DNA of 64,000 nucleotides from the NCBI GenBank assembly GCA_044892525.1, contig CM097886.1:183074312-183138311 (forward strand), read 5' to 3'. Both the position numbers and the translations under genes were made by a program. Below are positions 28,927-61,433 of this stretch, in pieces. The notes under the pieces were generated by a model. It was not told the origin of the DNA, made no database searches, and saw only the letters and a program-made list of their open reading frames with translations. The stretch is from Schmidtea polychroa (taxonomy: Eukaryota). Each line of letters begins with the position of its first letter. Position 1 is the stretch's first letter.

Positions 28927-28989
<63 letters not shown>

Positions 28990-30916: not shown

Positions 30917-31249
30917 TATCAATAAAATATAATCAATAATATATTCAGCACAAATTATCAATAAAATATAATCAATAATTTATCCAGCACAAATAATCAA
31001 TAAAATATAATCAATAATATATTCAGCACAAATTATCAATAAAATAAAATCAATAATATATTCAGCACAAATTATCAATAAAATATAATCAATAATTTAT
31101 CCAGCACAAATTATCTATAAAATATAATCAATAATTTATCCAGCACAAATTATCAATAAAATATAATCAATAATATATTCAGCACAAATTATCTATAAAA
31201 TATAATCAATAATATATTCAGCACAAATTATCAATAAAATATAATCAAT
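30912..31249. repeat. 39-bp minisatellite, 8 full units plus a partial unit
   Basis: Unit starts at 30912, 30951, 30990, 31029, 31068, 31107, 31146, 31185 and 31224. Confidence 0.95.
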
Positions 31250-31277
31250 TGTGAAAGCCAGTGAAAAACCCAAAAAA

Positions 31278-34200
31278 TTAATTGAAAAACATTTTAGTCC
31301 TGGTGACGATGTCAGCCTTACAGAAGGGGCATTCAAATAACTCCATGGAGCAAGCATTACATGTCAAATGGCCACATTGGAATCCAATTTCCACATTATT
31401 ACCTGAGCAAATTTGGCACATCTAAATTGTGATAAATCAATACAAATTCATCATATAATCTTACTGGTATTTCCTTATCATGTTCATTTCCTTCATTATC
31501 AGGTCTGGCAGTGTTTCTGTGACATTTCTCGATCTCCCCCTTAGCAACAATGTCTGTGCACGCATCAATTATCCGCTGGCCACGTGACGTCCTCTTATAA
31601 ATGTCACCGCCTTTCAGAATTATCATTTTAATAGCTGAGATTAATTTCCTTTTTGAATTTGCCTAGAAATCGATCAATGCGATAAATCAATAATCAATCA
31701 ATACATTATTGGCAATCGATATTTTCTCCAATAATTGTGTCAGCGCACATTTGCCGCTTTCATCCTCACCATCGAATTCCTTTGATTCAGTGATCAATGC
31801 GTTCACCAGGTCCATTTCTCCCATTTCAATTGCAATTTGGAGAGGAATTTGATTCCTTATGTTTCGCAACATGACAAATTTCCCTTGATTTACCGAATCC
31901 AATAATTTCCATGCAAATTCCATCTTCCTTTCTTGCAATATAAATGTGAATAAATTTTCACCGTTTCCAAATGTTCTCGGTGCCGATATTTCCGTTTGTA
32001 TCAAATGGTCAAATAGCTCGATATCATCACTATATACAGCTTTGTAAAGGAGATCCTCTATAACCGACTGCTGCAATATGGAACTAGATTTATTGAATAG
32101 TAATCTTATTAGGTTAGCTCCACAAATCTCGCATGATTGGAAGGTATCCTTTGATATAGCTGACCGCAAAAAATTGTCAGGTAAAAGCTCAATCAATGCT
32201 TTTGCATATGAGAACCACTGATTTAGGAAAGCCGTTTGAAAATCATTTGAAGTGAAATTTGTCAATCTCGGCTGATTGGACACGAGTGCAAGCATTAATC
32301 TGATAAATTGATTTATTATCAATGATTTATTAATATATTTCAATAAATTCTACTTTTCACTTCCAATATTCGATGCCAATTGGAATACAGTGATCCCATT
32401 GGTTGATTTGACATTGGCATCTGCTCCGTGTGCAATCAATATATTTGTGATATCGATTAATTTATTCAAGTTCTAAAATTGATATTTACAAGCCAATCAA
32501 AATATATCATTACATCATCATTGATATCAATTGGTGGCTCGACAAGCATCTCAAACAATGGAGTGCTTCTCAAATTGTTAACACTGTCAACCTGTGCTCC
32601 AGCATTGAGTAGTGAACTGCACATATTTGGTTTCAGGCATTTCACCGCGAGATGCAGCAGTGAATTGTTGTCACCATCATGAGCATTCGAACTACTTAAA
32701 TCGAGTCGTTCGAGAAAACACGGAAAAAGAATTCCATGAAATTTCATTGACAATGTTAACGCGTTTTCATAGCAAGTCAAAGAAATTATTGATTGTGCAA
32801 ATGGAATAACTGAAAATAATGAAATTCATTAATATTAATTGAATCATGTGTCTTTTATGGCTCATTACACATCCCATTCATTTACTGCTTTAAAAAAATT
32901 GTTAAATTTAAGTTATGCAAAGTGATTTGATCAGTTATTATTAATTTATAATAATAATTAAATAAAAAAAAATGGGAAAATATTTTTAATTCCAGAATTT
33001 AAATTTAAACAAAATAAGTATAACATTAAGAAATGAAAATATTATTTACATTATAAAAAATCCAATAAATACACGAAAGTAAAAATCTTAAACATTGTGA
33101 AACATTGCAAATTCATTCAATTTTTTAAATAGGTCAACTTAAAAATTTATAGATTTTCGATTTTCAAGGTTTTAACGAAAGTTCAATATTAATATTGATT
33201 ACTTTGATTCTCCCGGTAATTTTATGGAATCGACACCAGCGTAATCTGAAACACAGCTTATGACATTTTATATTTTTGAATGGCAACTAGTGTTTCCAAA
33301 TTACCCAAATTACAATTCTATATTAAATGCGTTTATTCATTGCAACGCAAAAAATCAACACACAGGTTTATGTTTATATAATATACACGTATTTTTTTTA
33401 TTTTTACATTATGGATGAGTTTATTCAATGCATCGGGTTTTGTGACAATTTTCTGTGATTTTCTGTGTATAAAGTTTGTGATTGAATTGAATATTTATGC
33501 GCGTTCATTTGATTAATTTATTGTGGGTAATGATTCCAATGGCTGTCTGTCCACAATTATATTTATTAAACCCGATATTATTCTAGCTTTTGTTTTACTA
33601 TATTGAAATTTAGAATTAAACTTTTTGTAACAATTAATTTATCAAAAATTAAAATTTTATTTTTCAGTTTTTGTTATATTTTTACATTTTTATTGGTTAA
33701 TAAGAATTTGCAATTTTAATTTCAAGCTTTTACAGCAATTCCTGATAAATCTCTTTTTAATACTTTTTCAAAATTTAAACTTCTTTGAATAAGCTAAATT
33801 ATATTTAATTGTTTTATTAAACAATCATGAGTTATTTTCTGGTTTCCTTATAATGATTTGCGGCTTCCTGGAAATGGTCTCATAGAAATCTGGATTCAAC
33901 CAGATAAAGATTTTTTCAAACTGCCATCATAATTATTGTAAGCTTTTTCAATTTGTTTTTCATTTGTTATTATTGTTATAAATTATTGAATATATGTTTA
34001 GGAATTGTGATGTAAGCCTTTATGATACGCTCGTCTATGTGTACTAGTTATTGCATGTATACATATATTTGACCTACTTTTTTAATAACTTTAAATATAC
34101 ATTTCAGCAGAAGACACAAGCCGTTATGATGATGCGAGTCTGACCTAAATAATATTTGAGTTGACCTACATAATATATAAGGCCAAAACAGCCTCAGCAG

Positions 34201-37200
34201 GTCGATCAGTGGTGCTGTCATGATGGAAGCATATCTACTACTTATAGCAGCCTTTATTCATTGGCAACAGGTGTAATCATTGTAGATCCTGATCCTGAAC
34301 CAATTAAAATATGGATCGCGTCTGTGTGCGCGTTGATTACACCTAACCGCGAAAGTTAACATTGTCTATAATATAAGTTGGTGTGCACACCACCTGAGGT
34401 GAGTCACCAATTATATGACAATGTTAACTTAATTTCATTTATTCAATTTTCCAAAAATCGTTTAAAGGTAAGTTTTTGCATTGAAGTAATTTTTAGGACT
34501 TGATTTTGATTTTATATAATTATGAGATCATTATTCAAGTTCTTAAATATTACTGTTAGTCAGCATTTATAATATTGATAATATATAACATTGATAATTA
34601 AATTTCAGGTGTTTTTTTAGGAATTTTATCGTATTTTATTTGGATTTATTTGGATTTATTTCGTAAAAATGTAAGTTAGATATTTTTATAATTATAAATA
34701 TGTAAAGTAATCACTAAACATTTATTTTTTAAAGACATTTAGTAAAGAATGGATAAAATATTTTTTAAGTTTTTGTAATCTTCTTTCGAATTTTGTCTAT
34801 TTCTGTAATTCTATGATTTAATTTATTAAAATTTACGATTTGCAATGTTTTTCCTGCAAATTCAAAGATGTCGAAGGATCTTCTTCAATATCTGTAAATC
34901 TAAAGAAATTTTATATTCTAAATTATTTTATAATTAAATCTTACGATGTATTTACTTCTTTTTCCCTAAAGCTCAACGTAGAGCAGTCGGAATCTGATTC
35001 AAAAGTTTTTTTGTACATAATTTTTTAAATAATTTTAAAATATTGATATGTTAATTATATGTTAATCAATCTGAATTTCGCATGAAAAACACTTTACTTA
35101 ATTTTGTATGTATTTTTCATTATGTGTGCTGTGTTTGTATGCTTAATTATTTTCTCTCACTTTTTAGATTCCTATAATAAATATGTTAAATTTCGCGGCA
35201 TTAAATTTCTACACACAGGTAAGTTTGTGTGTTCCTATAATATATATTTATTGATTTTTTTTTTAGATTATAGATAATGTTATATTTCGCGGTTAGGTGT
35301 ATTTGTTGGGATTGCTTGTTGAGTGCGCACACAGACACGAGGCAATGTTTGTGTGTTGGTGCTGGCTATTTATTATTTGTGGGTTCTGGAAGGACATTAT
35401 TATTGGTTGTTTGGATGAACTAATTGGATCGCTTTTGAATATTGATATTTTGTTTGGTTCATAAAACTTGCTAATGGTTAGGGCTAATAAATCAGGAATG
35501 TGCAAAGGTGGATTTGCCGGAGGTGATGCTTCATGAGCTGTGGTGCTCTCAATTGCTGGGCGCATTCTAGACATGGAGGTTTGACAGATTATTTGATGGC
35601 AATACGAACAGGACGATATTACAGGTTTATAACCACAGCGCAAAGGAGAATTTGTTCGAGATATTAAAGAACAAATGTGTTTCATTGCTCTTGTTGTTGA
35701 GCAAGCAATGCAGGCTGCTGCTTTATCATCGCTTCCTGATGAGTTATGAACTACCAGATGATCAATTTATAACCATTGGAAATGAAATATTGAGATGTCC
35801 AGAAGCTTTGTTACATCCATCGTTCTTGTGAATGGATATTGTTGGTATTCAGGAGGCAACTTATGACAGCATTACATTTTCTGCAGGACTAAAAAGATAT
35901 GATTTGATCCTTCCGTAATGCTTCTAGATCAGGGGTGCCCACTAATTTTTCTAGGAGAGCTACATTCACATCCAAAATGTGTATGCGATCTACTTTTTTA
36001 ATACTTACATAATATTTACCTACAATGCAATAAATTCATCACAATAAAACAAATATATGTCAAAATATGGAAAATTAAAGTATATAACTATTTATTATAA
36101 AAAAATGTAACTTAGGAAATCAAATTTAATGAAAATTATTTTTATATAGAACTTTTCGATGTTGATGCTCTACATTGGGTTGAATCCACTAGATTTTTGT
36201 AGTTTGGGATATAAGTGCTAAGACAACTTCTTAGGCTGGATTCCAAATGGTCATCTGTTAATGTTGCTCGGTACTTTGACTTTATAATTTTCAGATTGTG
36301 AAAAAGCAGAATCACATAAATAAGTTGAACCAAAACATGATACTAAATTTTCGAAGCATTTTTTCAAGTTTGAATATTTATCCTCTGATAGATATTTCCA
36401 TACATTTGCTTCGGAAGATCTTGATTTAATGAAGATATCATTTTGAAGTGTGATTATTTCCATTTCAAGTATAGGGATATCCATTTTAAACAAAGTTGAA
36501 ATTGAATCTGCAACAATTTCTGGTTTTATTTTTGGATTAAACGGAAAGGACATAAATGCAGCCACAATTTCAAGTTTCTTGGAGTCTTGAAAACGTCTCT
36601 CGAACTCTAAAACCAAAATTTTGATCTGTTTCGCATATCTCGTAATATTAAAGTTGACATTTTCAGATTCTTTTAATTGTGACAACATATTTGGAAAATA
36701 ACTTAAATTTTTGTCTTCTATTTTGGTAATAAGTAAATGAAGCTTCTGTATAAATGCATTGATTGAACTTATCATATCGAATATCAATTTATCCTTACCT
36801 TGTAAATCGAGATTTAATTCATTCAGAATTGCAGTAATATCTACTAAAAATGCCAAATCCAAGAGCCAAACATCATCTTCCAATTGCTTGAACTCATCAC
36901 CTCTTGCGGCAAGGAACAACTTAATCTCAGAAAGCAAATCTCTAAATCTTTGTAAGAATTTTCCTCTACTTAGCCATCTTACATCTGAAGGCATCAGTAA
37001 TTCAGTAGGACCTTCGCTATTACTTTCTTCAATTTGTAATTTGAAAAGTCGTCTCTGAAGACTTCTTGCACGAATCGAGTTAGCAATTTTGAATGTTATT
37101 TCCATAATATCTCTCATATTCAGAATTTTAGCACACAAGGCTTGTTGATGAATAATACAGTGGTAGGAAAGAAAATCTGGGAATTCACAATCATTCCTAC

Positions 37201-40200
37201 AATATGCTATAAATCCGTTGTGACGCCCTGTCATAGCTGGTGCGCCATCTGTTGTTATCGATACAAGCTTACAAATTTGGAGCTGAATGCTGTTGGCATA
37301 AGCTATAAAATTCTGAAATATATCCTCACCTCGAGTTTTACTTTTGAGTGGTATAATTGTTAATAATTCTTCCTTCGTAGAAAAATCTTTAAAGACCATT
37401 CGAATAAAAATTATAAGCTGCGAAATATCAGCCGCATCAGTTGATTCGTCTGCTTGCAATGAAAATGCGGTACAATTTCCTATGTCTAACATTAACTGAT
37501 TTTTTAAATTGGAACTTATTTCTTGGACTCTCCGTGTAACTGTATTACGGGACAATTGCATATCAGTAATAGCAGAAATTATATCTGATTTATTTTTAAA
37601 ATCACAAAATAATGATTCTGCCGCTTCTAAAAATGCTTCTTTTACAATTACTCCATCACTAAAAGATTTCTTATTTTTTGCCAGAATGTAGCTTACCGGA
37701 AAGATGCAGCTGTAGCTGACTTTGATTTGGATGTTAACTTCGTAAAAAATGACTGTTGAAAAGAAATGCATGTTTTCAGTTCCATGATTTTAGACTTGCG
37801 TAGTTCACTGTCAAGTGGATAATCAACTGCAAAAGTCTTATGAATTGTCTTGAAATGCCTTTCCAAATTCCCTCTTTTTGGTAATGAAATAGTAGCTTTA
37901 CAAATTAAGCAACAACATTTACCTTTAATCATTACAAAAAAGTACTCCTTCTCCATTTCTTCGCTATAATGATAAGTCTTGGCTTTTTAATTTAGCATTT
38001 TTAAACAAAATTAATTTAACAAAAAAGCTTAAGAAAATTTTTCACTTTGTTACACCAACCAAAATTAAATTTAACTAAATAAACAAAATTAAATTAAACA
38101 AAATTAAACTAAATAACATTTTGGAAATAGTGAAATCAAAATTAAAAAATGTTATTTAGTATTACCATAGAAATGGAACACAGAACATGAAAATTGGCAA
38201 AAAATTTAAGCATAAAATAGAAATTTTATATAAAATCTAAATTTATATAAAAAATATTTTTATGAAGATCTACTAAAAAATCCTTCGCGATCTACCGGTA
38301 GATCGCGATCGACCTTATGGGCACCCCTGTTCTAGATGTTCCCGTGGCATTGTAACCAATGACCAAATAATAACCAAATCAAACATTTCATTTGGCACTC
38401 AAAATAATTATTTCACAGAAATTATTTCTATTTTCTTTAACAAATTAATTAAAAGTTTTAGTTTGATAAAGTTTCACATCAATACAAGTATTAATATCGA
38501 AATAATAAAAGCAGATCGATTGCATATTAATTTAAATTAAATCAATTAATTAATTAATCAATTAACTAATAAATAATTTACCATTTTCATTTCCGGAATA
38601 TCGATTAATATTCTGTAAATAATAGAAATATAAAATTCAAATCAAATAAATTGTGACATTTCCTCACCTCAACAGATCTCACAACATCGGCACCCCGGTT
38701 CACCAGTTGAGCACAAACATTTACCATCCCTCGAATAACTGCACAGTGTAGGCCAGTCAACCCCATTTATATCTCACATAATTATTCAATCAATAAACAA
38801 CAAATCTCACAAATCCAGCATGATCAATATCAATTGATCGATCTATCAAATATTCACAATTGTCCTCCAATCCACTCGCAATCGCCTCATGCAATGGAGT
38901 TTGTGAATACTAAATAATGCCAATATATCAATATCAATATTGAATACTCTATTGAATTACTTTGTTTTGTGTATTGGTATCGATCTCAAATTGCTGCAAT
39001 ACATTGATGCATTTCCTATGATGCAGCGAATGGGCCAAGGCCAATGCAGTCCCCATTGTCTACAAATATATTGATTTGATCATTTCAATAAACACATACT
39101 TCATTATTTGCATTGATATCTACAATGTCCTGATTATCTAGTATAAATTTGGTCATATCGGCATCATTATCAGATATTGCTGTGTGTAATATGGTGAAAT
39201 TGACCTTGATAATAAATAAAATTAATTATTGATTTTGCATTATTCTGATGCACCTTTTGTCGTGATTCCATCAGAATCATTCGTTCTTGTATTTCTTCTT
39301 GTATTTCCACGAATCCTTTTTCCTTTGCTTTGTCAATGGCCTTGATCCATAACTGAATGATGAAATCAATGCTGATTTAATCAATTTCATCTCAAATTAG
39401 TTAATAATAATAATAATAATAATAACAATAATAACAAAAAACAGGTAAATGATAAGGTAAGCATTTGCTGCAAAATCTTTATTAAGTGAGAAAATTATTT
39501 ATATAAAATAATTCAATTCGATCTTTCATAATTTTGCTTCAATGTTGAAATGCTTGCATGATTTCCTTTTAAAATTCATTTCTGATTTTTATTTGTTCAA
39601 AAATTGATTAATTAAAATTACTGAAATGTAAAGCATAAAATATTTACGTGTTGACATATTTGAAAATATGTCCTACCAGTCAACTCAGGAAATGATTCAC
39701 TATAAATAGCGCTTAAAAGATTTCAAATATCTCAACTGGTTCTACTGTAACTGATGTAAGCGCTTAGGAACACTAATCCCCTAGCCATGGGATATATTAG
39801 TCGCTATCATATTATTAATATATTATTATCATATCAGACTATTATCATATTATTAATTTTGATCCCAGAAATTATTTGTCGGAAACATTTTTAAAAACCT
39901 GTTTGTATGTATCCAATAGTAACAAATTATTACTATTATTATTATAAGAACTTATTTTAAAAATTTTACCACAGATTTCCATTGACATTATATTTATTTA
40001 AAAGCTTGACTATGAATCAGTAAATATATCGATATAATTGATATGCACGAATTTTCGACACCGCCTTTTTCAATTGAATTATTATTATTAATATGATTTG
40101 ACATAATGAAATAACAAAATTCATAAATGTATTTTATCACAATTTTTAATTATTTAAACAAATTTAATATTTTGGTAAATGGTTTTGTGTGATTAATGCT

Positions 40201-43200
40201 TTTCTAATCACAACAATTCACTCCTCCTAATTTGATTGCTCTGCTGGCTATAGACGATCAACTGATAAATTCTCTAATACATAGCTTGAAATATTTTGGC
40301 TGCTTTTCTAATAGACGAAACGGACCATTATATGGAGCTTCTAATGATTTCCGTACATCTTTTCTCATGTACACGAATTCACAATCCTTAATATATTTAT
40401 TGATCGTCATACAATCTTGCAATGGTCTTTCGATTATTCTGAAGCTCTCAATAATTTCTTTAAATTGATATGGAGAAGCTTCTATTTATGAATTAAAAAT
40501 AATTCCTGGTACAGCAAGATCACATTCAAATGCTTTTTGTGTCGGAGAATAACCTGCTGAATCCCGACTGTTCCTTATCGTTAACAGTACCTGAGGTAAA
40601 ACGTCAAACTTTTAATTTAATTTTATTCATTTTATTAATTTATTATTAATTTTATCCATTGAAGCCATTTCTTGAGATTTTAGTGTCTGATGGAATTCTG
40701 CAACTTTACAATTGGCTTGGGAATGATAAGCGCATGTTTGATTTGTATTTATTTCAAGAAAGTTGAACATATACTGGAATAAAGAGTTTGTAAATTGATC
40801 TGTTACAATTTCAGATGGGATTCCATATCGGGAAATCCCCACTTCAATTAGTGATTTTGCCACAGTTTCTGAATCTATATATTAAATGGCCAATACCTCA
40901 GGGTAATATGTTTAACTATCGATCATTGTTAGTAGATAGGACTTCTCGTTATTTGCTAGGAAGATTTGCAATTCTGCTTTGATATGACGATATACTTTTG
41001 ATTTTAAGCAGGAATCGCGTTGCTGACACAACATCTGGACATCCTTTGTCATCTTGTGTCATGTATATGAACTCAACATCAATATCTTGGCCATTCGTAT
41101 TTCTGGATGAGCGACATATTTGGGTATATAGACAGTACTGTGCGAATTAGTGTGAATATGAAATAATTTACATGTTTTATCATCTAGTTATACGACCATG
41201 TCAAAATTAGCTCCAGTTTAGTTTTACTGTTCTTATATTTGTTGTGTAATAACGTATTGGAGTTTACAGACGTGTTGTTATAGATAATTTAGTAAATTCT
41301 ATTGTGCTTCCTTTAATTTTTTACTAAGACTATCCAAACTATTCTAATCTTTGTTTCTTTCTTATTTTAAAAGATGAATGTTTCTCCCAAGAAGAGCACA
41401 AAAATTGTTACCTTAAGTGAACACATCAATGTATCAAAGAGATATTGCCAAAGAGTGTGGTGCGAGTTTAGGAGCTGTAATCAACATTTTAAAACAAAAG
41501 AAGGAATTTGAGACGGTTTAGGCGAATAGAAAAGGAAAATGTGGAAGGAAGAGGAAGACAATAATAGATGAATTTATAATAGGAGTAAGTAAATTGAATT
41601 CTAGAGAAAATAACCAGCAACTTCAGAAAGGCTTAGCACATGGTGGAGTTATTATTCCCGATTCCACAGCTTGACAATGGCTTATCAAAGTTAGAACAAG
41701 TCTAATAGACCTCAAAAAAAAAACAATTATTGAGCTTTGTTTAAAAAAGTGACAACGAAAACTTTACGACAGCTCATATCAATAGAATCATTAAACGCGA
41801 TAAGGACGATGTTTTGATCTGGTTATTGTATAAAGGTACCGGATCCCTTGTGTCGGTTGAAGGCATGATAAAGGCGCTTTGTTTAATTTGTAGAAATATC
41901 GTAGCTGTTTTTAAAGATTATAATTTAAAACGGCATTATTTTCAAAAATATGTTTCCACGTATGATGATTACGACGGAATGTATCGTAAAGATAAAGTAG
42001 CTGGACTTAAGGAAAATCTGTTTTCTCAACAAACATTTTTCAAGAGAATTGTCACTCAAAATTATTCTGTCGTAAAAGTCAGTTATGTGGTAACAAATAT
42101 AATTGCAAAGAAGTCGAAACCCTTCACAGATCGCAAATTTATTAAGTAATGTTTGGAAAGTCTAGCTGACATTATTTGTCCAGATAAAAAATCAGACATA
42201 TCAACAATCAGTTTATCGCAACTAACTATAGGAGGACGAATTAAAGATATTCAGGACACCTTTGTCCATTGTGAGGCGTTTTGTAATTTGTATTTAAATA
42301 ATGGTATGATGTTGTGCTTGTTTGATTGTATGCTGAAATCCTTACTTATACATTAATTATTATTTTTTAGAAACTCATAAAACAAATTAACGTTATAATT
42401 TGTTTTAATAATATTTGTGTTTTTATAATAAACGTGTTTTAGTTATGGATTCTATTAATACCCGTAGCTCTGTGGCTAATATGGCGACGACGATTGCAAA
42501 TTTTATCAAGCCACAAGAAACATATGACATGAATTCAGACGTGGAAGATTTTATCTTAGAAACGGAACGATTCTTCGAGATGACAAATATTGTCGATGAA
42601 TACAGAAGCAAATTCGTCAAAGCTTTTCTATCAATCAATTCAACGAAGAAATATGAGTTGACTAATGAAACTCTGCATTATACAGAAAGATTAAGAAACG
42701 CTTTTGCTAAGAACAGAAGTCTTATCGATGATCTCAACGAAGCGCTAAATTATCGTCAAGGAAATGAGGCTGCCGAAGAATTCTGCTCAAAAATTGAGAA
42801 ACTTGCAAAAAATATTTTGAAGCATAAACTTGATGAAGAAGAACTAAAGAAATTTTTGCTATTCAATTCGCTTGAAGATAAAGAAGTTAAAAAAGATCTC
42901 AAAATGCAAGATTTAAAATCATTTGATGAAATGAAAGAAAGATTAAAGAGACACGACCAAGTTTCAAAAGAAATTAATGTATTTCATGCTGATGTAGCTT
43001 CAATGAATAAAACACAACGCTATGCTGATGCTGTTAAGAAGAGCTTACCAAGATATAGTTATGATAACAGATCAATTCGAGAACGAGAAGCTAATCCCAG
43101 ATTCAAAGATGAATATAAAAGAGAACCTCAACATAATCCAAGATTCAAAGGCGATCTTACCAGAGAACATCGATATGCTATTTCAAATGAATGAAAACCT

Positions 43201-46200
43201 ATGAATAGAAGTAAGCCTTATAATACCAGGGAATTTCATTCGCGAGATCATGTCCAAACAAATCAAATTTTGCGATGTTGGGCGTGCCACGAAGAAGGTC
43301 ATAGAAGATCTGAATGCCCCAATATTCAATGTGCCCATTGTAAAAGATCTGGACATTTCAAACATCAGTGCCATGAGTTATTTCCAGGCAGACGTCGAAA
43401 ATTCCATAAATCAGTGGCTGCATTCGGTGACGAGGATTCAGAGGCTGATTTTGAGTACCCAAATGGGAATGCTCCACCACACGAGGAGGTGATCGGAGCA
43501 ATAAATTAAAGGTAATTAATGATATGAGTAAGGGTTGTATGATTTTGAATGATTGTGATAGGTTGAATGATTGTGATAGTTTGAATGATAACTGTTGTGA
43601 TGGTGTTTTTGATTATAGAAATTATATTAATATATACATTAATAAATTTTGTATGGATGAAGTTTTCAAAGACCCACCCCTAACTTCTAATGAACTAAAT
43701 GTTCTTAATCGTGATAAACGGAATGATATAATAGTATACGATAAAATGCAGGGAAGGCCCAGTGTTACCGTAATGATTAATAATGTAAAATTAGTATGCC
43801 TATTAGATACTGGAGCTAAAATAAGTGTGATTGATTATAATATTTTTAAAATACTTGGAAATTTGAATATGACTACAAGTAATCTGAAATTAAGATGTGC
43901 GAATTATAGCCCGATTGAAATTTGCGGTAAAACTTTATTAAATGTAAAAGTTGATAAAATTTCTGATATTAAAAAAGTAGAATTCGTTGTAGCCAAAGAT
44001 ATAAACCCAAAGTTGATAGGAGGTATAGATTTTCTCGAAAGATTTGGAATGCAATTGCAAATAGAAAACCGTACAGACGAAATAAATACAATTATGGAAA
44101 ATTCATTTAATAACCACATAAGTGAAGATAAGATTATAAATAATTTAATTTCCACGTTTGACGGTATTTTTATGAAACATAAATGGGATGTTGGAAAAAC
44201 CGAACTATTAAAGCATGAAATACTTACTAAAGGTTATAATAAACCCAAGACGACAACCTATACATTTAATAGAAAAAATTGAAGAAAATATTCAAGAAAT
44301 GTTGAAATATGGCATTATATATGAATGTACATCTCCTTGGAATTCTCCATTAGTATGTGTTAAAAAGAAAAACAGTAGTGATATAAGAATATGCTTGGAC
44401 TACCGTGCTTTAAATAATATAACCGAAAGACCTATTTTTCCCATTCCAAATACTGATGAATTATTAGATATTCTTGACGGAGCAAAGTTTTTCTCGACAA
44501 TTGATTTAGGCAATGCTTATAATCAAGAAGAACTCGATGATGCATCAAAATTGAAAACAGCATTTCCGACAAAAAGCAAGCAATATTACTTTAACAGAAT
44601 GCCATTTGGAATAGCAGCCGCACCAGCAACATTTCAAAGACTTCTCGTTTCCGCCAATGGAACATTAGTAAAAAGACTACACACATCAAACGAAACCATC
44701 ATTTCATCATCAGAACTTTTCTTCAGTGCAGCAATGAATGAAGCAAATTCAAAGCTATCCTTACATTCGAACTCAGACGCCATTAAAGGTTTTAATAACC
44801 CATCCAAAAATTTGGCAATTTTATATTGAGCGGTTCCTACCATCGATAACACTGGTCTCATAGACATACCTGCTTTATGTACTTTTGGAAGACCATAAAA
44901 CTGGTTTATATACAACGCCTGATAGTTTTTGTGAGTTTAAATATAAAAGGAATATGGTGAGAGGATTAGTGTTTCGTGCTTGGTCACTATCCTCCACGTT
45001 TGCTAATTCAGTAAAAAGTATTGATGTATTAGTTGAGTTGTTACTTAAAAATGGCTACTCTAAATCTTCTCTTGAGAAGATGACAAAAGTGACCGTGGAT
45101 AAGTTAATGTTTAAATCTGATAACGTTGGTATGTGTACGTCTGAATCTGAGGTACCTATTGATCCTGAGGAAAGAACTATGTTAAATTCGGAAAGTGACA
45201 AGAATCGATCCAATCGCATGGAGCAGAAATATGTGTTAGTATTGCCTTATTCGGAGGGTTTCAGAGAATTTAAACATAAAATTCTCAAATATGTAGACAA
45301 GGATCAATTAAGGATTGTTTCCACTTCTTGCAAAGTTAGCAGTATGTTTACTAGTAAATGTCCAACGCCAATTGGTTTGTGTTCTGAGCTTGTGTATCAA
45401 TTTTCATGTAATGGGTGTAATGCCATATACATTGGAGAGACTGCCCGTCATCTCTGCACCCGAGTTCTTGAACACTGTCGACCATAAGGATTGACTAATA
45501 TTAGTAATCATGTTAGGAAATGTGTCAGTAAAAAAATAGGTATCTCTGATTTTAAAATTATTTCAAAAGGTTTAAGTAATTATTGGGAACGAGTAACTTG
45601 TGAGTCATTGTTGATTAGATATTTAAATCCAAAAATAAATGATCAAGTTGCCCGTTCCACGGAGAATTTGAATGTGTTTAAGTAATTGAAGGATGAAGGT
45701 TGGGAGTCGTGTTTGTGGTATAATTATGTTTGTGTTTTGTAAACTATGTAATTTTTTTTAAATTTCTTAACTTTATGTTGAATGTTAAATGTTATTAAAT
45801 TAAAATTTAATTTTAAAATAATATGTATGTGGGGCTATGTAAAATATGGTTTGGTTTTTTAAAATATTGTTTTTGAAATATTTTTTTTAAAATTTTTGAT
45901 ACAGTTTGGAGATGATTATTATTAGTTAATTTGTTTAGATATTGCATATTTCATGTCTTATTATTGATTATCCAGATTGCGGCCTGACGAAGATTGTTGT
46001 ACAATTGAAATATATCGCGTTTATGTTGAATTTATTGAGTTGGCATTTCTGTATTATTAAATCATTGCCACGTTTTTTTGATTATTAATAATAATAATAA
46101 TATTAATTATTATTATCATAACAATCACTAAATGATGGCATCGATTTAAATATAAATAAAACGACAATCCAATATTAATAACTTTTTTTTAAAATTAAGA

Positions 46201-49200
46201 AATAATGAAATAACAAGTGATTATAAAGTAAAATTATTTATTGGTATATTTTGGATAGAAAAATAGAAATCGTTAATGAATTGCATAATTATATCTTTCT
46301 TGAATGTTGCTTTTTAAATTGCGTCTTTCAGAAGCTAGAGATATTCGTTTGAATGAGAATGCAAATGCCTTTATTGCTCTATTGATGCTAAATGTGCTAA
46401 TGTTCATTGGAATTATTTCATAAACTTGCGTTCGAATTGACTCTGATGTTATTGAAACATCCTCAAGAAAAAACCTCACGCAAATTCTTTTTCAGGCGTT
46501 AACAGTTTTCCTTCGTGGCTTTTCGTTGATTCAATCCTTCCACCTTTTTGTATACACGGATAACACTCGCAACTGTTTGGTAATTTATATTTAATTAGTT
46601 TGAAATTTCTTTTATGCTTTAGCTGGGATATATTTATCGTAAACAAATAGCTCATCGAATCTGACAGCTTCATACTTACAGAGATTTACATTCACCCTTA
46701 ATATTTTGATTTTGACATCATTATTGAAAAAAGAGAAATAATAATAATAATAATAATTTTAAATCAATAAATAATAATAAATTAATAAAATAACTTGTCA
46801 ATATATTATATAATTCAAATAAATCAATAATTATTCCATTTCCACAAAGTTTATGAAATATTTCAACATAAAATCGATCGCCTTCACTCAAATGCGAAAT
46901 TTAAAAAATTTAACAAATCGATCTGACGCTTCATAAAATATTTATTTAAAATTCATAAATAAACCAATCAAATATTTTCTCACCGATTTGTCGTAAACCG
47001 TTTTCTTCATGATCGATTCGACAAACAGATGATGGCCTTGATTGACAGCCAATTCCAGAAATGACAGCTCGCCCTAATCAATATCAATACAAATCCAAAT
47101 AATTATTTGACCTTACGATTCTGCGCTGCCCATTGATAGTGTGAGCAGAATTGAATCTCTTGAACCCGCTCATGTGCCCGTGAGTGATGCAGCGATAAAG
47201 GACGCACTGAAATTATTTATTTATTGATTTATTCAAATAATCAGCTCACTTCTTTCATTAAATTTGCATTTTTGTCCATTTGTGCTGTCAATAATTCCAT
47301 TGCATTATTGATTTCCTATTGATGAGAATATTAATTATATCAATCAATAAATCAATCAAACTTTATCATCAATTGGTTTGTCAAGGATTAATTTAATAAT
47401 CTTATCAGCATTGGACTCGATTGCTCCCTCCAGCACAGCCAATCCAGTCTAAATATCAATTATTAACCAATCAGAATATCACAAATTTACATAAATATTC
47501 TGCATTATGAAATCAGAAGATTTGAACAAATCACCAAATGCGATTGCATCATCCCGTTCAATGGCAGGAAATAACTGAAATATTTATTCAAATTGATTCA
47601 TAATGAAATAATTCACACTTTCTCCGCATGAGTCAATATTTCCACGCGATCAGCACATTTATATTGCTTTGCTATATCCAGCGGACTCTTTCCATCCTAA
47701 ATAAATAATCCAATCAAAATATCCGAATCAGCGAATCATTTAAACATCCCCATTCACAAACAGATCATTAAAGCACTGTGGCAATAAATGGTACTAAAAC
47801 CGACACTGCAAAACCGCGTGCAAAGTGTAAATACCCGTGAGATATCATGCTAAAGAAATAGTTGAGAAATGGCAAATCTGATCCGAATTACTAGCCAATG
47901 GAATTGCCGATTTGCATTTATTAATGAATTCTGTCAGTGGAGATCTCCAAATAAATGAAGTCGACATTTCAATATTGCTTCATTCATTTCAGACATTTAC
48001 TGCATAAAATTCTCCAGTGCAAGGAATAAATTGCCAGAAAAGCTGCTAGAAAAGCTTTTCATTCATTTTGAGGCGTAGCAGAAAATATTTCAAATAGCAA
48101 AAATTATTTCTGTTGAGAAGTGAAAAAGTGAATTAAAAATAAAATCGATAGCAAGGAAATAGCCAATTAAAATGCTGAATTTAATGTGAGAAGTAGAGAA
48201 ATGCAAATTTACAGGAAATATTTTACATACCAAAACGTAAACAATATTTGTGATGAACATCTGGCCTGCACAATCAATATTCAGTGGCCATTGTTCTGCT
48301 TGCATTGCAATTATTGGCCTGATCTGTTTCACGGTAATTTTGATACAAATGCTATGTAAATATATAATTATTATTTTTAGCTTTGTTTTTATCATTATCA
48401 TTAAATTATTTGTGAAATGTCCGAAATATTGGCAAATACAAATGAGAAACCCGATGAGTATTCTGGCAATGAAAGCGATGAACATTATGACAGTGAATAT
48501 ATCATACAATAGTGACAGCGACACTCCTGACAATGAAGGAGCTTCTTCCTCCTCAGAAAGCGAGAGTGAATATGAGAAATTTACAAAATAAAGGTGCGAA
48601 TGTTACAGTTGATGAGCAACTATTTCCAACCAAGCTCGATGCTTTATAAATCATGACTTTGTTCTCACAATTTAGAAAGGTAAACCGAACTAAAGTTATT
48701 TTTAAAGTTATTTCAAAACATAAATTCTCTTTCATTTTATAATAATATATCTGATCGAATGGCAAGGAAATGTAGCGTCAAATCTGGGCCTAGAATATGG
48801 CCGCTTCAAGTACCTTTCAATATGCTAGGCTTAGCTGCAATGAATGCCTCGATACCATATAAGGGAACTGCAGCAGATAACATATCAATATGCTAGGCCT
48901 AGCTGCAATGAATGCCTCGATACCATATAAGGGAACAGCAGCAGATAACATATCAATATGCTAGGCATAGCTGCAATGAATGCCTCGATACCATATAAGG
49001 GAACAGCAGCAGATAACATATCAATATGCTAGGCCTAGCTGCAATGAATGCCTCGATACCATATAAGGGAACTGCAGCAGATAACATATCAATATGCTAG
49101 GCCTAGCTGCAATGAATGCCTCGATACCATATAAGGGAACCGCAGCAGATAACATATCAATATGCTAGGCCTAGCTGCAATGAATGCCTCGATACCATAT

Positions 49201-50469
49201 AAGGGAACTGCAGCAGCAATACAAAATCAGAAAGCGTATCACCAGTAAATATATCGACACCTTCAAATAGCCTCCATCTCACGCGTAAATGGCGCATGAT
49301 TGGATATTGCAATAATAATAACATCACAAATAATTATTTTCATTGCTTTAAATGAATTATTTCCAGTTTAATAATGAATATTATATTATAATTATATTTA
49401 TTTATTATTTGATAATATGGCAGCGCATGTAAGGCTACTTTATAAAGGTTATTTGCTAATCAATCGCTTCTGCTTGGGGAGCAAGATATTATATTTGATG
49501 GCCCATTGAAGCCATTATGACTGTTGCTGGTAGCAATTGCTGTGATTGTTATTGGCCGTTCTAGTGTTAGTTATCTAAATTGATAAATTATTGGCTGTTG
49601 GCAATGCAATTTGCTGCGGCGGCTGGTAAAGGGCAAGATCATATGATAATGCTGTCACATCGATATTGGCCATATCGGGCCTGCAGGGAGCTATTGCATT
49701 CTCACCCCGCTAACGGTTCCATTGACACCTCATTCTGTGCTCTCTTGCCTCTCACTAGAGCTCTCTGAGGCAATTCTCAATGGCATTTCATTCATTGCTC
49801 CTTATGCAATCCATTTCACATATTCAATTAACCAGATCGCAACTCACCAGATTTAATTGATATTTCATTATATAAAATGTTAATGTTTACTTTTGTTCGG
49901 CAATCGATTCGGCATTTCCGCTGCAGCAATAATTTCAATATTTCTGACTGCCCTCCCCTGCTAGCATAATGAATTGCTCTCCATCCCTGCAATTTATCAA
50001 TTAATTATTTATTTGCAATGATTATTTACCCCATTGCTCTCAGATTCCACATCGCAGTTGCTGTCAAGCAATAATTTCAATATTTCTGAATGCCCATTGC
50101 TGCTAGCATGATGAATCGCTCTGAATCCCTGCAATTTATCAATTGATTATTTATTTGCAATGATTATTTACCCCATTGCTCTCAGATTCCACATCGCAGT
50201 TGCTGTCAAGCAATAACCTGGCAATATCAACAAATCCCTCACGGCAAGCAATGTGAATGGGCAACCGGCCCTGAAATCAGAAACATTAACCCAATAATTC
50301 GCATTGCCAATCAATCTCACATAATCATCAACAATCCTATGCACAAATTCTCCCCTCAAATTATCCCTGACGCCCTCCACATTTCCCCTCATCAAGTGCT
50401 CCTTGAAACATTGAAAATCCCTGCAATGCAAATTATCCAATGCAAATCATAATCAATATTTCACCCCAT
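31278..50469 (-). CDS. Ankyrin-repeat / C3HC4 RING protein, copy 2; 22 exons (one extra repeat exon, one acceptor lost)
   Basis: Exons: 50469-50465, 50420-50321, 50270-50172, 50128-50030 (new), 49986-49891, 47696-47619, 47574-47491, 47448-47362, 47315-47250, 47206-47117, 47073-46984, 39352-39254, 39204-39100, 39059-38961, 38909-38811, 38766-38668 (AG changed to AA), 38612-38582, 32809-32514, 32472-32354, 32299-31705, 31662-31465, 31421-31278. No exonic stop or frameshift seen. Confidence 0.83.
34340..35299. mobile_element. 960-bp non-autonomous TA-target DNA transposon (Tc1/mariner-type MITE), unit 2 only
   Basis: Perfect 15-bp TIR CACCTAACCGCGAAA / TTTCGCGGTTAGGTG with a TA duplication; unit 1 has a single TA at 3969-3970; no convincing ORF. 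Confidence 0.93.
35474..35876 (+). pseudogene. Actin pseudogene fragment (copy 2)
   Basis: Near-identical to 4143-4545. Confidence 0.92.
35930..38329 (-). mobile_element. Full-length 2400-bp hAT transposon (SPIN/Charlie/Buster type), unit 2 only
   Basis: 12-bp TIR CAGGGGTGCCCA / TGGGCACCCCTG, 8-bp TSD TTCTAGAT, and subterminal palindrome CGCGATCTACCGGTAGATCGCG. Confidence 0.96.
36142..37956 (-). pseudogene. GTF2IRD2/SPIN-like hAT transposase split by two 1-bp frameshifts
   Basis: CCCLIC...[45 protein letters not shown] and [12 protein letters not shown]; frameshifts near 37696 and 36298. Confidence 0.9.
40234..42252. mobile_element. Copy-2 integrase, Tc1 and hAT remnants
   Basis: Colinear with 6500-8517. 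Confidence 0.8.
42270..44644 (+). mobile_element. Gypsy 5' part, copy 2, with an extra frameshift in pol
   Basis: Colinear with 8535-10917; a net 8-bp loss near 44233 splits pol. Confidence 0.92.
44645..46087 (+). mobile_element. Penelope-like element, copy 2
   Basis: Colinear with 10918-12360; AAA changed to TAA at 45485 within the GIY-YIG region. Confidence 0.92.
45979..46021 (+). ncRNA. Minimal hammerhead ribozyme (copy 2)
   Basis: Identical to 12252-12294. Confidence 0.75.
46273..46673 (-). mobile_element. IS630/Tc1-like remnant, copy 2
   Basis: Same translation as 12546-12946. Confidence 0.65.
48427..49330 (+). mobile_element. piggyBac remnant with the 68-bp x6 array (48817-49216), copy 2
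   Basis: Colinear with 14700-15620; 15 bp shorter at the array end. Confidence 0.8.
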
Positions 50470-52019
50470 CTTGATATTTCCTTTCTGTTTTATCTATCAA
50501 TTAATTCAAAAATCAATAAATTTAATTATAATTTAATTAACAAGTTCAAAATCAAAAAATCTTACTTCCTAAAATCCAAATGAAATCAATTAAATAGCAG
50601 CCAATCAATTCTCAAGGCCAAATTATAAATTTGAAGCGATAAAACAAATCAATTGCAATCAATAATAAATGTAATATATATAATGGAATTGTCAGGCTGA
50701 TAAAATTGATATTCAATATTCAATGCGACAACCGAGCGATCTGACGGATTCCCCCGATGCGGCAATTATTATCAATGATTACAACATTCCATGGAGCTGC
50801 AAATATTATTATTATTATTCTTTGGTAACTTTCAAGTAATTTCCAATTATAATTTGCAAGCATTACACAAATGCCTAAATATTATTTTAAATGCTCAATT
50901 ATATCCACTCAAATCCTCATGCTAATAAATAACAATATTAATAACAATTTTATACAAATCATTTAATTGCTTTATAATTGCTGATATTTCATAACATCAC
51001 ATATAATTGTTACATAAAATGAATAAATTTATTAATTAAATAATAAATCAAATAGAAATTATATTAATAAATACAAAGATGAAAAACATAAAAAATTAAA
51101 CATTTGAATAATTATAAAAGCCAACATAATTATATAAACAAATATACAAAAATATTATAATGGTAATATAATTGAAAGCACATTAACGCAAAACAAATAT
51201 ATTTCACTAAAACTGGAAATAATAATGCTTAAATTAAATCAGCAAATGTTTAACAAAAAATATCATAATATTCTAAAAATTTAAATATTTTAATTTCAAA
51301 TATATAATGCATTAGTAAGATGGGAAACTACTTACAAAATTATTAAAAGTTTGTTTAAAATTAATGGTTTTTTGAATTTGACTTTGGAATTTGATTTACT
51401 GTTCACCTCTTAAGTGGTAATTGATAACATTTTTGTGAACATAATTTTTCAAAGTTTCTCTATGTCTCAATTCGAATTTGGAATTTTCAGTTTTCATCAT
51501 TATTTACAATCGTCTTTCTTCCAAAAGTGTATTGTTGGTTTCTGAACTATGCCGAAATTCCGAGCATTTTGAAAGCTACAGAATATTATTATTTTTACTT
51601 CATGATTCATTAGTCGAGAACACTTCAGATCTATTTCAGGACGAGGAGATTTTAATCGGTTTTTCCTTATTAGTTTCATTCATTAAATTGCTTCAAGTTA
51701 CGATCAAGGACATTTTGGATTGGTACTTATTCTGAGGATCCATAAAAACTCGAGGTTTCGAGCTTATATGATATCACTGGAGTAATTACAAGATATAATT
51801 CTGCGTTCAATAAGGCTCATTTATAATTATTCATCTGACAATTCCACTCATATTTCATTAATGATTTTGCCAATCATGACAGAAAATAGCTATTTTAGCT
51901 CCTCGGTTTATAAAAAATTGATCAAAGATTGAACCGTAAATAATAAAGCAATTGTTGGGTCGCTTAGGGGTGTGTCATTTTATTGCTAAAATGTTTTAGG
52001 GGTATTATATGTAAGGAAT

Positions 52020-60660: not shown

Positions 60661-61291
60661 ATGCTAGATTAGTTATAGCTATTTATGTACTGTTTTCCGC
60701 TCGTTGCATTTTCCTTTTTACATCCGGTATTCTCCGTTAAGTTCTCTAGATGTATTCCTTTATCCAGTACTATTCATAAAAATGAGCAAGTACTAGCCTT
60801 TCCACAATGTTACCCATCCTGGATTCGCATTCGCAGCGGTTAGCCTTTAAGAGACGATTCGATTATCTCTAGGTCAAAGTCTTGATTAAGATTCTCTTTA
60901 TTTGATATTTGGTGCCTTATTATTTATTGTGTTTTGTTATATTTTTATTTGAATGCCTTTTTAATAGACTTTTGCTGTTCCGACTTTCCAATTTATCATC
61001 ATGCATTTTGACATCCTTGGGTACTCCACCCTTGGATTGGTGTGTGTACAGAATACAAAATATTAGTACTATTAATTGGCTAGATACTCATGATAATTAA
61101 TCGTGATTATTACTCGAGGTAATTTGATCTTTCATGTAGCCTCTAATCCACACATTCATATAATCACCCATCCCTCTTTTAGAGTACGTTCCAAAAGAAT
61201 TCCGTTCTATGAGAACTATCACTGGATCCATTCATCTATTCACGATTCTGGTAATATTCAAAAATTAACATTTGATAAATCAGTAACATCA

Positions 61292-61433
61292 NNNNNNNNN
61301 NNNNNNNNNNNNNNNNNNNNNNNNNNNNNNNNNNNNNNNNNNNNNNNNNNNNNNNNNNNNNNNNNNNNNNNNNNNNNNNNNNNNNNNNNNNNNNNNNNNN
61401 NNNNNNNNNNNNNNNNNNNNNNNNNNNNNNNNN
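61292..61433. other. Assembly gap (142 N)
   Basis: N run at the site orthologous to 27341-28154. Confidence 1.

What the first reader, a model, noticed from the sequence alone, without database searches (positions are those of the whole stretch)
50030..50171. Extra chimeric ankyrin exon created by a 142-bp exon-plus-intron duplication
Seen: copy 2 has a new 99-nt exon [33 protein letters not shown]. Its 5' half is exon 4 type and its 3' half exon 3 type, switching within the shared TTATTGCT. Both splice sites and the frame are intact. The two 43-bp introns differ by 1 nt and the 3' halves are identical, yet the 5' halves differ at the contact codons (F/W, H/Y, SN/RG, H/Q). Inference: unequal crossover changes repeat number, and the binding residues then diverge quickly. 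A loss from copy 1 is equally possible.
Basis: partly seen in the sequence, partly recalled or inferred. Interest (0 to 1): 0.86.

Follow-up and report, generated by a model that had tools for sequence, protein, structure and literature searches.

The report
Variable-number ankyrin exon cassette
The extra 99-nt ankyrin exon is real, but it is one of 29 identically built internal exon cassettes in a tandem family of about 26 or more ankyrin-RING ubiquitin-ligase genes whose repeat number (2-6) and binding-surface residues vary strikingly between near-identical gene copies.

Summary
On the minus strand, copy 2 carries a 142-bp unit that copy 1 lacks: a 99-nt phase-0 exon at 50128-50030 plus a 43-nt intron at 50171-50129. 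The exon's 5' half is of the last-repeat type and its 3' half of the first-repeat type.

The interpretation needs amending. This exon type was not created here. The same 19-nt junction occurs 29 times in the genome. All 27 internal units in 21 parsed paralogs have this build, and so do ~50%-identical public gene models. Seven 33-kb tandem gene copies differ by 1.4% or less in their flanks, yet carry 2, 3, 2, 4, 3, 6 and 2 units.

Repeat number therefore changes by recurrent unequal exchange or conversion among 142-bp cassettes. Copy 1 is neither a simple deletion product of copy 2 nor its simple precursor.

Nucleotide diversity is 0.28 at nine codons, against 0.03 in the intron. Six of these codons fall on positions randomised in designed ankyrin binder libraries. 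Their variants are shared and reshuffled among paralogs, so they are standing diversity rather than change after the duplication.

RNA-like runs show exon-only depth and GT..AG splicing of the family. Inclusion of this particular exon could not be assigned. The scan's other notes on this gene are unchecked first-reader notes on the same locus.

The parts
50030..50128 (-). Extra internal ankyrin exon u2 of copy 2: 99 nt, 33 aa, phase 0. Its 5' half is last-repeat type and its 3' half first-repeat type.
   Evidence: Pfam Ank 26.4 bits against a cut-off of 21.1. Its 30-nt hypervariable haplotype occurs once in the genome.
50129..50171 (-). 43-nt intron between u1 and u2 (GTAAAT..TTGCAG). Together with u2 it makes up the 142-bp unit that copy 1 lacks.
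   Evidence: Depth is zero in the RNA-like runs X7 and X9 but not in the DNA runs (bin 50126-50159).
49987..50029 (-). 43-nt intron between u2 and u3. It differs by 1 nt from the upstream intron.
   Evidence: RNA contigs join across a 43-nt intron here, but carry paralog letters.
50172..50270 (-). First-type ankyrin exon u1, 99 nt.
   Evidence: Ank 29.2 bits.
49891..49986 (-). Last-type ankyrin exon u3 (96 nt, ends ..[13 protein letters not shown]). It is followed by a 2.2-kb intron.
   Evidence: A loose RNA end at 49891 runs on into a paralog version of the next exon.
50321..50420 (-). N-terminal cap exon (..[20 protein letters not shown]).
   Evidence: The same start is seen in public model P0155, MMGDFQCF. 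Spliced joints in RNA contigs.
50465..50493 (-). 29-nt exon carrying the ATG (50469-50467). A 44-nt intron lies downstream and a 72-nt 5'UTR intron upstream (50494-50565).
   Evidence: GT..AG joints 50419/50464 and 50493/50566 appear in X7 and X9 only.
16179..16416 (-). Copy 1 counterpart with only two units: u1 at 16416-16318, 43-nt intron at 16317-16275, last unit at 16274-16179.
   Evidence: Coordinates converted from locus L011.
31281..31421 (-). C-terminal RING exon of copy 2.
   Evidence: Pfam zf-C3HC4_3 33.9 bits against a cut-off of 27.
31281..50650 (-). Approximate span of the whole copy-2 ankyrin-RING gene, about 22 exons, with mobile-element insertions in its introns.
   Evidence: tblastn of public homologue P0003 against the window finds ordered open exons. 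ORF list.

Best explanation
The 142-bp unit is a genuine in-frame ankyrin cassette, consisting of one 33-residue repeat plus its 43-nt intron. It sits in one member of a tandemly arrayed ankyrin-RING E3 ligase gene family.

The true tandem repeat runs from mid-exon to mid-exon (3' half of an exon, intron, 5' half of the next). Every internal exon in the family therefore looks chimeric. Two-unit genes hold one copy of this repeat, copy 2 holds two, and other paralogs hold up to five.

Copy number changes through homologous unequal exchange or ectopic gene conversion between cassettes, both within and between paralogs. Because each cassette is a phase-0 exon with its own splice sites, every such event yields an open, spliceable gene.

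The same exchanges reshuffle a pool of alternative codons at nine positions, most of them on the ankyrin target-binding face. Diversifying selection probably maintains that pool. The protein product would be a RING ligase whose substrate-recognition surface varies in both length and residues between paralogs.

Shown: the anatomy, the family-wide cassette structure, the number variation, the site-specific hypervariability, and transcription and splicing of the family.

Inferred: the recombination mechanism, the selection, E3 activity, a recognition role, and inclusion of this particular exon in mRNA.
For: - All 27 internal units in 21 paralogs share the same chimeric build, a 99-nt exon and a 43-nt intron.
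- The exact 19-nt junction is found 29 times, the last-type junction 26 times and the first-type junction 24 times.
- Public gene models at about 50% identity have the same cap, first, internal and last (LQRKC) layout, with 4-5 units.
- On the flank tree, seven local copies lie within 1.4% of each other but carry 2, 3, 2, 4, 3, 6 and 2 units. The tree needs 13 changes of unit number over 21 tips.
- Copy 1 and copy 2 are about 99.3% identical over 33 kb. Their ankyrin exons nevertheless differ at 12 of 195 nt, 11 of them in the variable codons of those units.
- Nucleotide diversity is 0.277 at the nine hypervariable codons, 0.018 at other exon sites and 0.031 in the intron. Mann-Whitney P = 1.4e-7.
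- There are 38 haplotypes among 48 units, and all four gametes are present between every pair of neighbouring variable codons.
- In the seven closest copies, u1 differences number 110 in the variable codons and 0 elsewhere.
- Runs X7 and X9 show exon-only depth and GT..AG joints that are absent from DNA runs X1 and X5.
- The Ank and zf-C3HC4_3 domains score above their Pfam cut-offs.
- Our variable positions 2, 7, 10, 32 and 33 correspond to positions 5, 10, 13, 2 and 3 randomised in the ANK-N5C library (PMC4308713).
Against: - No read or contig spans the whole array, so the unit count at this locus rests on the assembly alone.
- RNA contigs cannot be assigned to copy 2, because most 31-mers are shared with paralogs.
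- A 185-nt skip joint could mean that the exon is skipped, or that the contig comes from a two-unit paralog.
- No formal codon-model test that allows for recombination was run. Hypervariability could partly reflect relaxed constraint at surface positions combined with homogenisation elsewhere.
- No targets, E3 activity or phenotype are known.
Confidence: 0.72

Rival explanations
1. One reading: a recent in-situ duplication in copy 2, caused by a crossover between exon 3 and exon 4 at the shared TTATTGCT, created a new chimeric exon. Its contact codons then diverged quickly by point mutation.
For: - The two 142-bp copies are adjacent.
- Their 3' halves are identical and their introns differ by 1 nt.
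- 10 of the 11 differences cluster in the 5' half.
Against: - The same junction exists 29 times in the genome and in distant homologues, so it arose long before copy 2.
- Every allele at codons 2, 4, 7, 10 and 11 of u2 and u3 recurs in other paralogs' units; only Q at codon 13 of u3 is unique among the 48 units.
- Codons 10-11 differ at 4 of 6 nt between u2 and u3. Independent point changes are unlikely to produce that in sequence whose intron differs by only 1 of 43 nt.
- Units 2 nt away from the u2 5' half sit in seven other units of six paralogs.
Confidence: 0.08
2. A simple one-step deletion. Copy 1 lost one 142-bp unit from a three-unit ancestor that resembled copy 2.
For: - Deletion between tandem 142-bp units is mechanistically the easiest event.
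- Repeat loss dominated among spontaneous mutants of fungal hnwd genes (PMC2873952).
- Multi-unit architecture is ancestral in the family.
Against: - Copy 1's last unit (W, Y, CH) cannot be made as a mosaic of copy 2's u2 (F, H, SN) and u3 (W, Y, RG). It is instead identical to the last unit of the gene on the other side of copy 2.
- Copy 1's u1 also differs from copy 2's u1 at 5 nt.
- The flank tree does not resolve the direction of change.
Confidence: 0.12
3. An assembly artefact. Either the extra unit comes from mis-assembly of near-identical repeats, or two haplotypes were placed in tandem.
For: - The two 33-kb copies are about 99.3% identical.
- No short-read contig spans the array.
- The window contains masked N runs.
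Against: - At least seven consecutive ~33-kb copies exist, with distinct unit numbers and distinct insertions. Copy 2 has extra stretches of about 1 kb and 2.4 kb in its introns.
- An array of three units (426 bp) is far shorter than long reads (own knowledge).
- The u2 haplotype is unique yet in frame.
- DNA runs from two studies hold 38-67% of the sampled words and cover the exon.
Confidence: 0.04
4. The exon is present in DNA but is not used. Either copy 2 is silent or a pseudogene, or the exon is skipped during splicing.
For: - A contig in X7 and in X9 joins u1-type sequence directly to u3, skipping 185 nt.
- Some paralogs carry stops: u4 of the C1 copy ends in TAG, and the C4 array has units with stops.
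- No RNA contig could be assigned to copy 2.
Against: - The 185-nt skip fits the 43-nt intron equally well, because the 3' halves of u1 and u2 are identical. It also fits two-unit paralogs.
- Splice sites and frame are perfect.
- All located exons of copy 2 are open.
- RNA contigs at 95% likeness or better cover the exon, and no differing letters are listed there.
Confidence: 0.15

Closest known systems
Fungal NLR repeats with high internal conservation (Podospora hnwd / het-e / het-d WD repeats, and the ANK and TPR repeats of fungal NLRs; PMC2873952, PMC4986451)
   Same: - Near-identical tandem repeats.
- Repeat-number variation by unequal exchange within and between paralogs.
- Concerted evolution.
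- A few hypervariable codons on the binding face of the solenoid.
- A multigene family.
   Different: - The host here is an animal genome. Dyrka et al. found such repeats in only 0.8% of metazoan repeats.
- The partner domain is a C-terminal RING, not a NACHT or NB-ARC NTPase.
- Each repeat is a separate phase-0 exon with its own 43-nt intron, so the recombining unit includes non-coding DNA.
- Arrays are short (2-6 units).
- Variation is shown here only between paralogs of one assembly, not between individuals.
Intragenic exon-containing tandem repeats whose number varies by unequal crossover, such as the LPA kringle IV-2 repeat and the NBPF Olduvai exon doublets (own knowledge)
   Same: - A tandem unit made of exon(s) plus intron.
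- In-frame gain and loss that changes the number of protein domains.
   Different: - The unit is only 142 bp, against several kb.
- The repeat phase is offset from the exon boundaries.
- It is coupled to site-specific hypervariability.
- Variation is documented among paralogs rather than alleles.
Designed ankyrin repeat libraries (DARPins; ANK-N5C, PMC4308713)
   Same: - A constant framework with diversity confined to the beta-turn and first-helix positions.
- Natural variable positions 2, 7, 10, 32 and 33 correspond to library positions 5, 10, 13, 2 and 3.
- Position 11 corresponds to DARPin position 14, and position 23 to DARPin position 26 (own knowledge of Binz et al. 2003).
   Different: - This is a natural, germline-encoded family with restricted residue alphabets.
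- It is fused to a RING domain.
- Library position 33 (our position 30) is nearly constant here, while our positions 27 and 31 vary.
Expanded ubiquitin-ligase substrate-adaptor families under adaptive evolution (nematode F-box and MATH-BTB families, primate TRIM5-type restriction factors; own knowledge)
   Same: - Large, tandemly clustered ligase-related families.
- Rapid change concentrated in the substrate-binding module.
- A proposed role in recognising foreign proteins.
   Different: - The recognition module here is an ankyrin solenoid whose length also varies.
- No functional or infection data exist for this family.
Ankyrin-RING ligases (plant XB3/XBAT, animal MIB1/MIB2)
   Same: N-terminal ankyrin repeats followed by a C-terminal C3HC4-type RING.
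   Different: - The XB3/XBAT RING model scores 17 bits against a cut-off of 50.
- No MIB/HERC2 or ZZ domain matched in the segments scanned.
- Family-specific sequence relatives were found only among a few unnamed UniParc gene models.

Membership tests
Ankyrin repeat (Pfam PF00023) | A 33-residue unit that matches the Ank model above its gathering score. | tested here: met
   Scores against a cut-off of 21.1 bits: extra exon 26.4, u1 29.2, u3 26.0.
RING-type E3 ligase (Pfam PF13920, zf-C3HC4_3) | A C3HC4 zinc-finger signature scoring above the cut-off. | tested here: met
   The terminal exon 31421-31281 scores 33.9 bits against a cut-off of 27.
RING-type E3 ligase (Pfam PF13920, zf-C3HC4_3) | Ubiquitin-ligase activity. 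| not testable with these tools
   This needs an in-vitro ubiquitination assay.
Exon-containing tandem repeat varying by unequal exchange | Head-to-tail copies of exon plus intron, with frame and splice sites preserved. | tested here: met
   TRF finds a 142-bp period at 93% matches. All units in 20 of the 21 paralogs are open with GT..AG introns.
Exon-containing tandem repeat varying by unequal exchange | Copy number differs between otherwise near-identical genes. | tested here: met
   Seven copies carry 2, 3, 2, 4, 3, 6 and 2 units, with flanks within 1.4% of each other.
Exon-containing tandem repeat varying by unequal exchange | Copy number differs between individuals (allelic polymorphism). 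| not testable with these tools
   Only short de Bruijn contigs were available, and none spans the array.
High-internal-conservation recognition repeats (fungal NLR type) | At least 85% identity between repeats over at least 100 residues (Dyrka et al. criterion). | tested here: inconclusive
   Internal units are 85-100% identical in six of the seven C2 paralogs that have two or more internal units (0.82 in the C1 copy). The 100-residue length is reached in the 5- and 6-unit genes. Copy 2 has a single internal unit and 49% mean identity over all three units.
High-internal-conservation recognition repeats (fungal NLR type) | Hypervariable codons on the predicted binding face. | tested here: met
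   Diversity is 0.277 at these codons against 0.031 in the intron. Positions were mapped by sequence register onto library positions. No structure was computed.
High-internal-conservation recognition repeats (fungal NLR type) | A central NOD (NACHT or NB-ARC) NTPase domain. | tested here: not met
   Pfam finds only Ank-type and RING domains in the window segments scanned and in homologues P0033 and P0155.
XB3/XBAT ankyrin-RING ligases | A match to the family-specific RING model PF24921. | tested here: not met
   17 bits against a cut-off of 50.

The most novel reading that the evidence does not exclude
The cassette design (one phase-0 ankyrin exon plus a homogenised 43-nt intron) may serve as a substrate for elevated or programmed recombination and short-tract conversion. 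Such a process would continuously generate new ankyrin-RING recognition specificities. It could differ between individuals, clonal lineages or even somatic cell lineages, giving an animal counterpart of the fungal repeat-shuffling receptors that is coupled directly to ubiquitination of the recognised target.
Probability: 0.08. Interest if true: 0.92.

Novelty: new variant of a known kind. Interest (0 to 1): 0.6.

Why it matters
Taken alone, an extra exon made by unequal crossover is textbook. In context it marks a gene family that behaves like a natural ankyrin binder library fused to a ubiquitin ligase.

- About 26 close genes (40 or more C-terminal exon matches) share a constant framework.
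- Nine positions are combinatorially variable, six of them at positions randomised in designed ankyrin libraries.
- The number of modules changes faster than the flanking DNA diverges.

Repeats with this behaviour are well documented in fungal non-self receptors but rare in animals. If the family recognises foreign or selfish proteins and marks them for degradation, it would be a new type of animal innate recognition repertoire.

It would also be a clean system for studying how exon-intron architecture makes repeat shuffling safe. The family is easy to test, because PCR ladders in 142-bp steps and long-read cDNA would settle polymorphism and expression.

Tried and rejected
1. Finding the window's own protein or spliced transcripts in public protein collections.
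- The profile-free search with the 220-aa C-terminal exon and three word-index searches returned only a few unnamed UniParc gene models at 45-78% identity, plus generic ankyrin proteins.
- No transcript-derived protein of this organism was found, so inclusion of the exon in mRNA could not be shown this way.

2. RNA runs.
- No holder is on record as RNA.
- X7 and X9 behave as RNA, but their contigs are short and shared among paralogs. The 185-nt skip joint and the 43-nt joints cannot be assigned to copy 2.
- Depth in the bin holding the within-exon junction is explained by words shared with u1 and u3, so it is not evidence of inclusion.

3. Direction of change.
- The flank tree has only 2 well-supported inner branches out of 18, so gain versus loss is unresolved.
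- The unaligned Hamming count for the downstream flanks was spoiled by indels and is not used.

4. Species identity.
- Names are coded. My guess of a flatworm (planarian) rests only on genome traits and was not verified. These traits are 781 Mb, about 30% G+C, three contigs of 93-272 Mb (C1, C2, C4) and 43-50-nt introns.
- Two literature searches for a described planarian ankyrin-RING expansion found nothing relevant.

5. Pfam on the intronic mobile-element ORFs gave only a weak DUF4371 hit, below its cut-off.
Full report
**Observation**

The window holds two ~33.7-kb direct copies that are about 99.3% identical. Each carries a minus-strand gene of about 21-22 exons, with ankyrin repeats at the N-terminus and a C-terminal RING.

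At the 5' end of the gene, copy 2 has exactly 142 bp that copy 1 lacks. Tandem Repeats Finder scores this as a 142-bp period with 2.1 copies at 93% matches.

Reading the minus strand gives this order:
- u1 exon, 50270-50172
- 43-nt intron, 50171-50129
- u2 exon, 50128-50030, the extra exon
- 43-nt intron, 50029-49987
- u3 exon, 49986-49891

All exon starts follow AG and all exon ends precede GT. Exons are phase 0, and each encodes one 33-residue ankyrin repeat (Pfam Ank 26-29 bits against a cut-off of 21.1).

The 5' half of u2 is of the last-unit type. Its 3' half is identical to that of u1. The switch falls in the shared TTATTGCT. The introns differ by 1 nt. The 5' halves of u2 and u3 differ at codons 2, 7, 10, 11 and 13.

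**The exon type is not new**

A search of the whole assembly with the 801-bp region found more than 25 related loci, mostly on contig C2 between 183 and 188 Mb. I fetched 21 of them and parsed them into units. Three results follow.

- Every gene has one first-type unit, one last-type unit (ending LLQRKC..) and 0-4 internal units. All 27 internal units have the same chimeric build as u2, a 99-nt exon and a 43-nt GT..AG intron.
- The exact 19-nt within-exon junction occurs 29 times in the genome. The last-type junction occurs 26 times and the first-type junction 24 times.
- Public gene models only about 50% identical to this family (P0033, P0155, P0273) show the same cap, first, internal and last layout with 4-5 units.

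The simplest description is that the real tandem repeat is offset from the exon boundaries. It consists of the 3' half of an exon, the intron, and the 5' half of the next exon. It is flanked by a unique first 5' half and a unique last 3' half. The junction in TTATTGCT therefore dates from the origin of the family, not from copy 2.

**Repeat number is labile**

Seven consecutive gene copies at ~33-kb spacing carry 2, 3, 2, 4, 3, 6 and 2 units. Other paralogs carry 2-5. A tree of 885 flanking columns places those seven copies within 1.4% of one another. It needs 13 changes of unit number over 21 tips.

One gene has two fully identical adjacent units (183188k u2 and u3), which points to a very recent duplication. 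A diverged paralog on C4 has 15.9 units of 141 bp arranged in a 283-bp higher-order repeat.

Domain repeats of this length are generally thought to change by unequal crossing-over rather than slippage (PMC5100051).

**Gain or loss?**

Neither simple version fits.

- Copy 1's last unit (W, Y, CH at codons 2, 7 and 10-11) cannot be assembled from copy 2's u2 (F, H, SN) and u3 (W, Y, RG). It is instead identical to the last unit of the gene on the far side of copy 2.
- Copy 1 and copy 2 differ at 12 of 195 nt in their shared ankyrin exons, against about 0.7% over the whole 33 kb.

The arrays must therefore have exchanged sequence with other paralogs after the 33-kb duplication. The direction of the number change stays open.

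Going from one repeat copy to two needs either conversion from a longer paralog or an illegitimate event. Going from two to one needs only homologous misalignment.

**Hypervariable codons**

Among the internal units, nucleotide diversity is 0.277 at the 27 sites of codons 2, 7, 10, 11, 23, 27 and 31-33. It is 0.018 at the other 72 exon sites and 0.031 in the intron (Mann-Whitney P = 1.4e-7).

Extra codon variants are mostly non-synonymous: 29 against 10 in the 5' half and 21 against 2 in the 3' half. In the seven closest copies, pairwise differences in u1 number 110 in the variable codons and none elsewhere.

The 48 internal and last units carry 38 different haplotypes at five codons. All four allele combinations exist between every neighbouring pair of variable codons, including the adjacent codons 10 and 11.

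The variants in u2 and u3 of copy 2 recur in other paralogs, apart from Q at codon 13 of u3. The full u2 combination, however, is unique in the genome. I read this as standing diversity that is reshuffled by recombination or short-tract conversion and kept by diversifying selection. It is not divergence after this particular duplication. Recurrent mutation cannot be excluded.

By the Pfam register (exon residue 1 equals model position 2), our positions 2, 7, 10, 32 and 33 correspond to positions 5, 10, 13, 2 and 3. These were randomised in the ANK-N5C library, where they form the continuous binding surface on the beta-turn and first helix (PMC4308713). Our positions 11 and 23 correspond to DARPin positions 14 and 26 (own knowledge).

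**Expression**

No run is on record as RNA. I laid four runs on 49650-50650.

- X7 and X9 have high depth on exons and zero or near-zero depth in the 43-50-nt introns.
- In X1 and X5 the intron bin 49990-50023 is the deepest or second deepest, as expected for DNA.
- Only X7 and X9 show joints: a 72-nt 5'UTR intron, a 44-nt intron after the ATG exon, the cap-to-u1 intron, and 43-nt unit introns.
- A loose end at 49891 continues into the next ankyrin exon 2.2 kb downstream.

Several of these contigs carry paralog-specific letters (GCTAAT, ..KA, ..ETNG), so multiple paralogs are transcribed and spliced as modelled.

Whether u2 of copy 2 itself is included cannot be decided. The 185-nt skip joint fits exon skipping, a two-unit paralog, or simply the 43-nt intron, because the 3' halves of u1 and u2 are identical.

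**Gene and family**

- The terminal exon is a C3HC4 RING (zf-C3HC4_3, 33.9 bits against a cut-off of 27).
- tblastn with homologue P0003 finds ordered open exons across copy 2.
- The 220-aa C-terminal exon has 40 matches in the genome, 17 of them at 92% identity or more.
- Copy 2 has two insertions in its introns that copy 1 lacks. This argues that the two are distinct loci rather than one locus assembled twice.

**Comparison with known systems**

The closest described phenomenon is the set of highly conserved, number-polymorphic WD, ANK and TPR repeats of fungal NLR non-self receptors. These evolve in concert and carry positively selected binding-face codons (PMC2873952; PMC4986451). That study found such repeats in only 0.8% of metazoan repeats.

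The present family differs in three ways. It is in an animal genome, it is joined to a RING rather than an NTPase domain, and each repeat is packaged as its own exon with an intron.

It is not an XB3/XBAT-type ligase by the family-specific RING model (17 bits against 50). Two literature searches found no description of such a family.

**Verdict**

The mechanism of number change is supported at family level. The claims of a new chimera and of rapid divergence after the event are not supported.

The finding is an ordinary event inside an unusual family. I rate it a new variant of a known kind, with interest 0.6.

The scan's other notes on this locus and its neighbouring copy (s1-217224, s1-217300, s1-217314, s1-220217, s1-220124) are unchecked first-reader notes. 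They agree with what I found.

Noticed in passing
window 48817-49216 (also 14949-15588 in copy 1): A 68-bp tandem repeat, 5.9 copies at 97% matches, lies inside the 2.2-kb intron downstream of the last ankyrin unit. It is present in both gene copies.
   Followed up: no
window 35929-38330 and 34322-35299: Copy 2 has insertions of about 2.4 kb and about 1 kb in its introns that copy 1 lacks. The larger one holds a 512-aa open frame (37789-36254, minus strand) with only a weak DUF4371 match below the cut-off. It may be a hAT-like transposase relic.
   Followed up: partly
window 30828-30932 and 30834-31340: A partial second copy of the RING exon (..[29 protein letters not shown]) lies about 450 bp downstream of the real one. 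A 39-bp tandem repeat sits beside it.
   Followed up: no
L031 (G000:C4:1593000-1597500), positions 1053-3295: A diverged paralog has 15.9 ankyrin cassettes of 141 bp, organised as a 283-bp higher-order repeat at 95% matches. Runs of its units are identical. Some units appear to carry a stop or lack the canonical acceptor, so it may be decaying.
   Followed up: partly
L028 (G000:C1:2243600-2245600): The only close paralog on contig C1 has five units. Its fourth unit ends in an in-frame TAG, so the gene is either a pseudogene or skips that exon.
   Followed up: no
window 50296-50329: One 515-nt RNA-like contig (run X9) skips 34 nt with non-canonical ends (GA..TT on the gene strand) in place of the 50-nt cap-to-u1 intron. 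The same contig correctly splices the two upstream introns. It may come from a paralog with a deletion, or reflect aberrant splicing.
   Followed up: no
window 39355-46981: The 7.6-kb intron holds open frames on the gene strand that look retroelement-derived by eye (44936-44637 and 40881-40630). Pfam gave no match at E 0.001.
   Followed up: partly
window 27325-29840 and 61116-63070: An 8-9-bp microsatellite-like array lies between the gene copies, next to the masked N runs (27341-28154, 29670-30079, 61292-61433, 62898-63349). The N runs were left untouched.
   Followed up: no
P0275 (protein from a 1262-nt Logan contig): A 335-aa ankyrin-RING protein is encoded as one uninterrupted frame on a short public contig. 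It has similar repeat motifs (..RPIH.AC..G...I.K.LI..NC..ES) and a similar RING at about 40% identity. It may be a shorter relative of this family in another organism.
   Followed up: no
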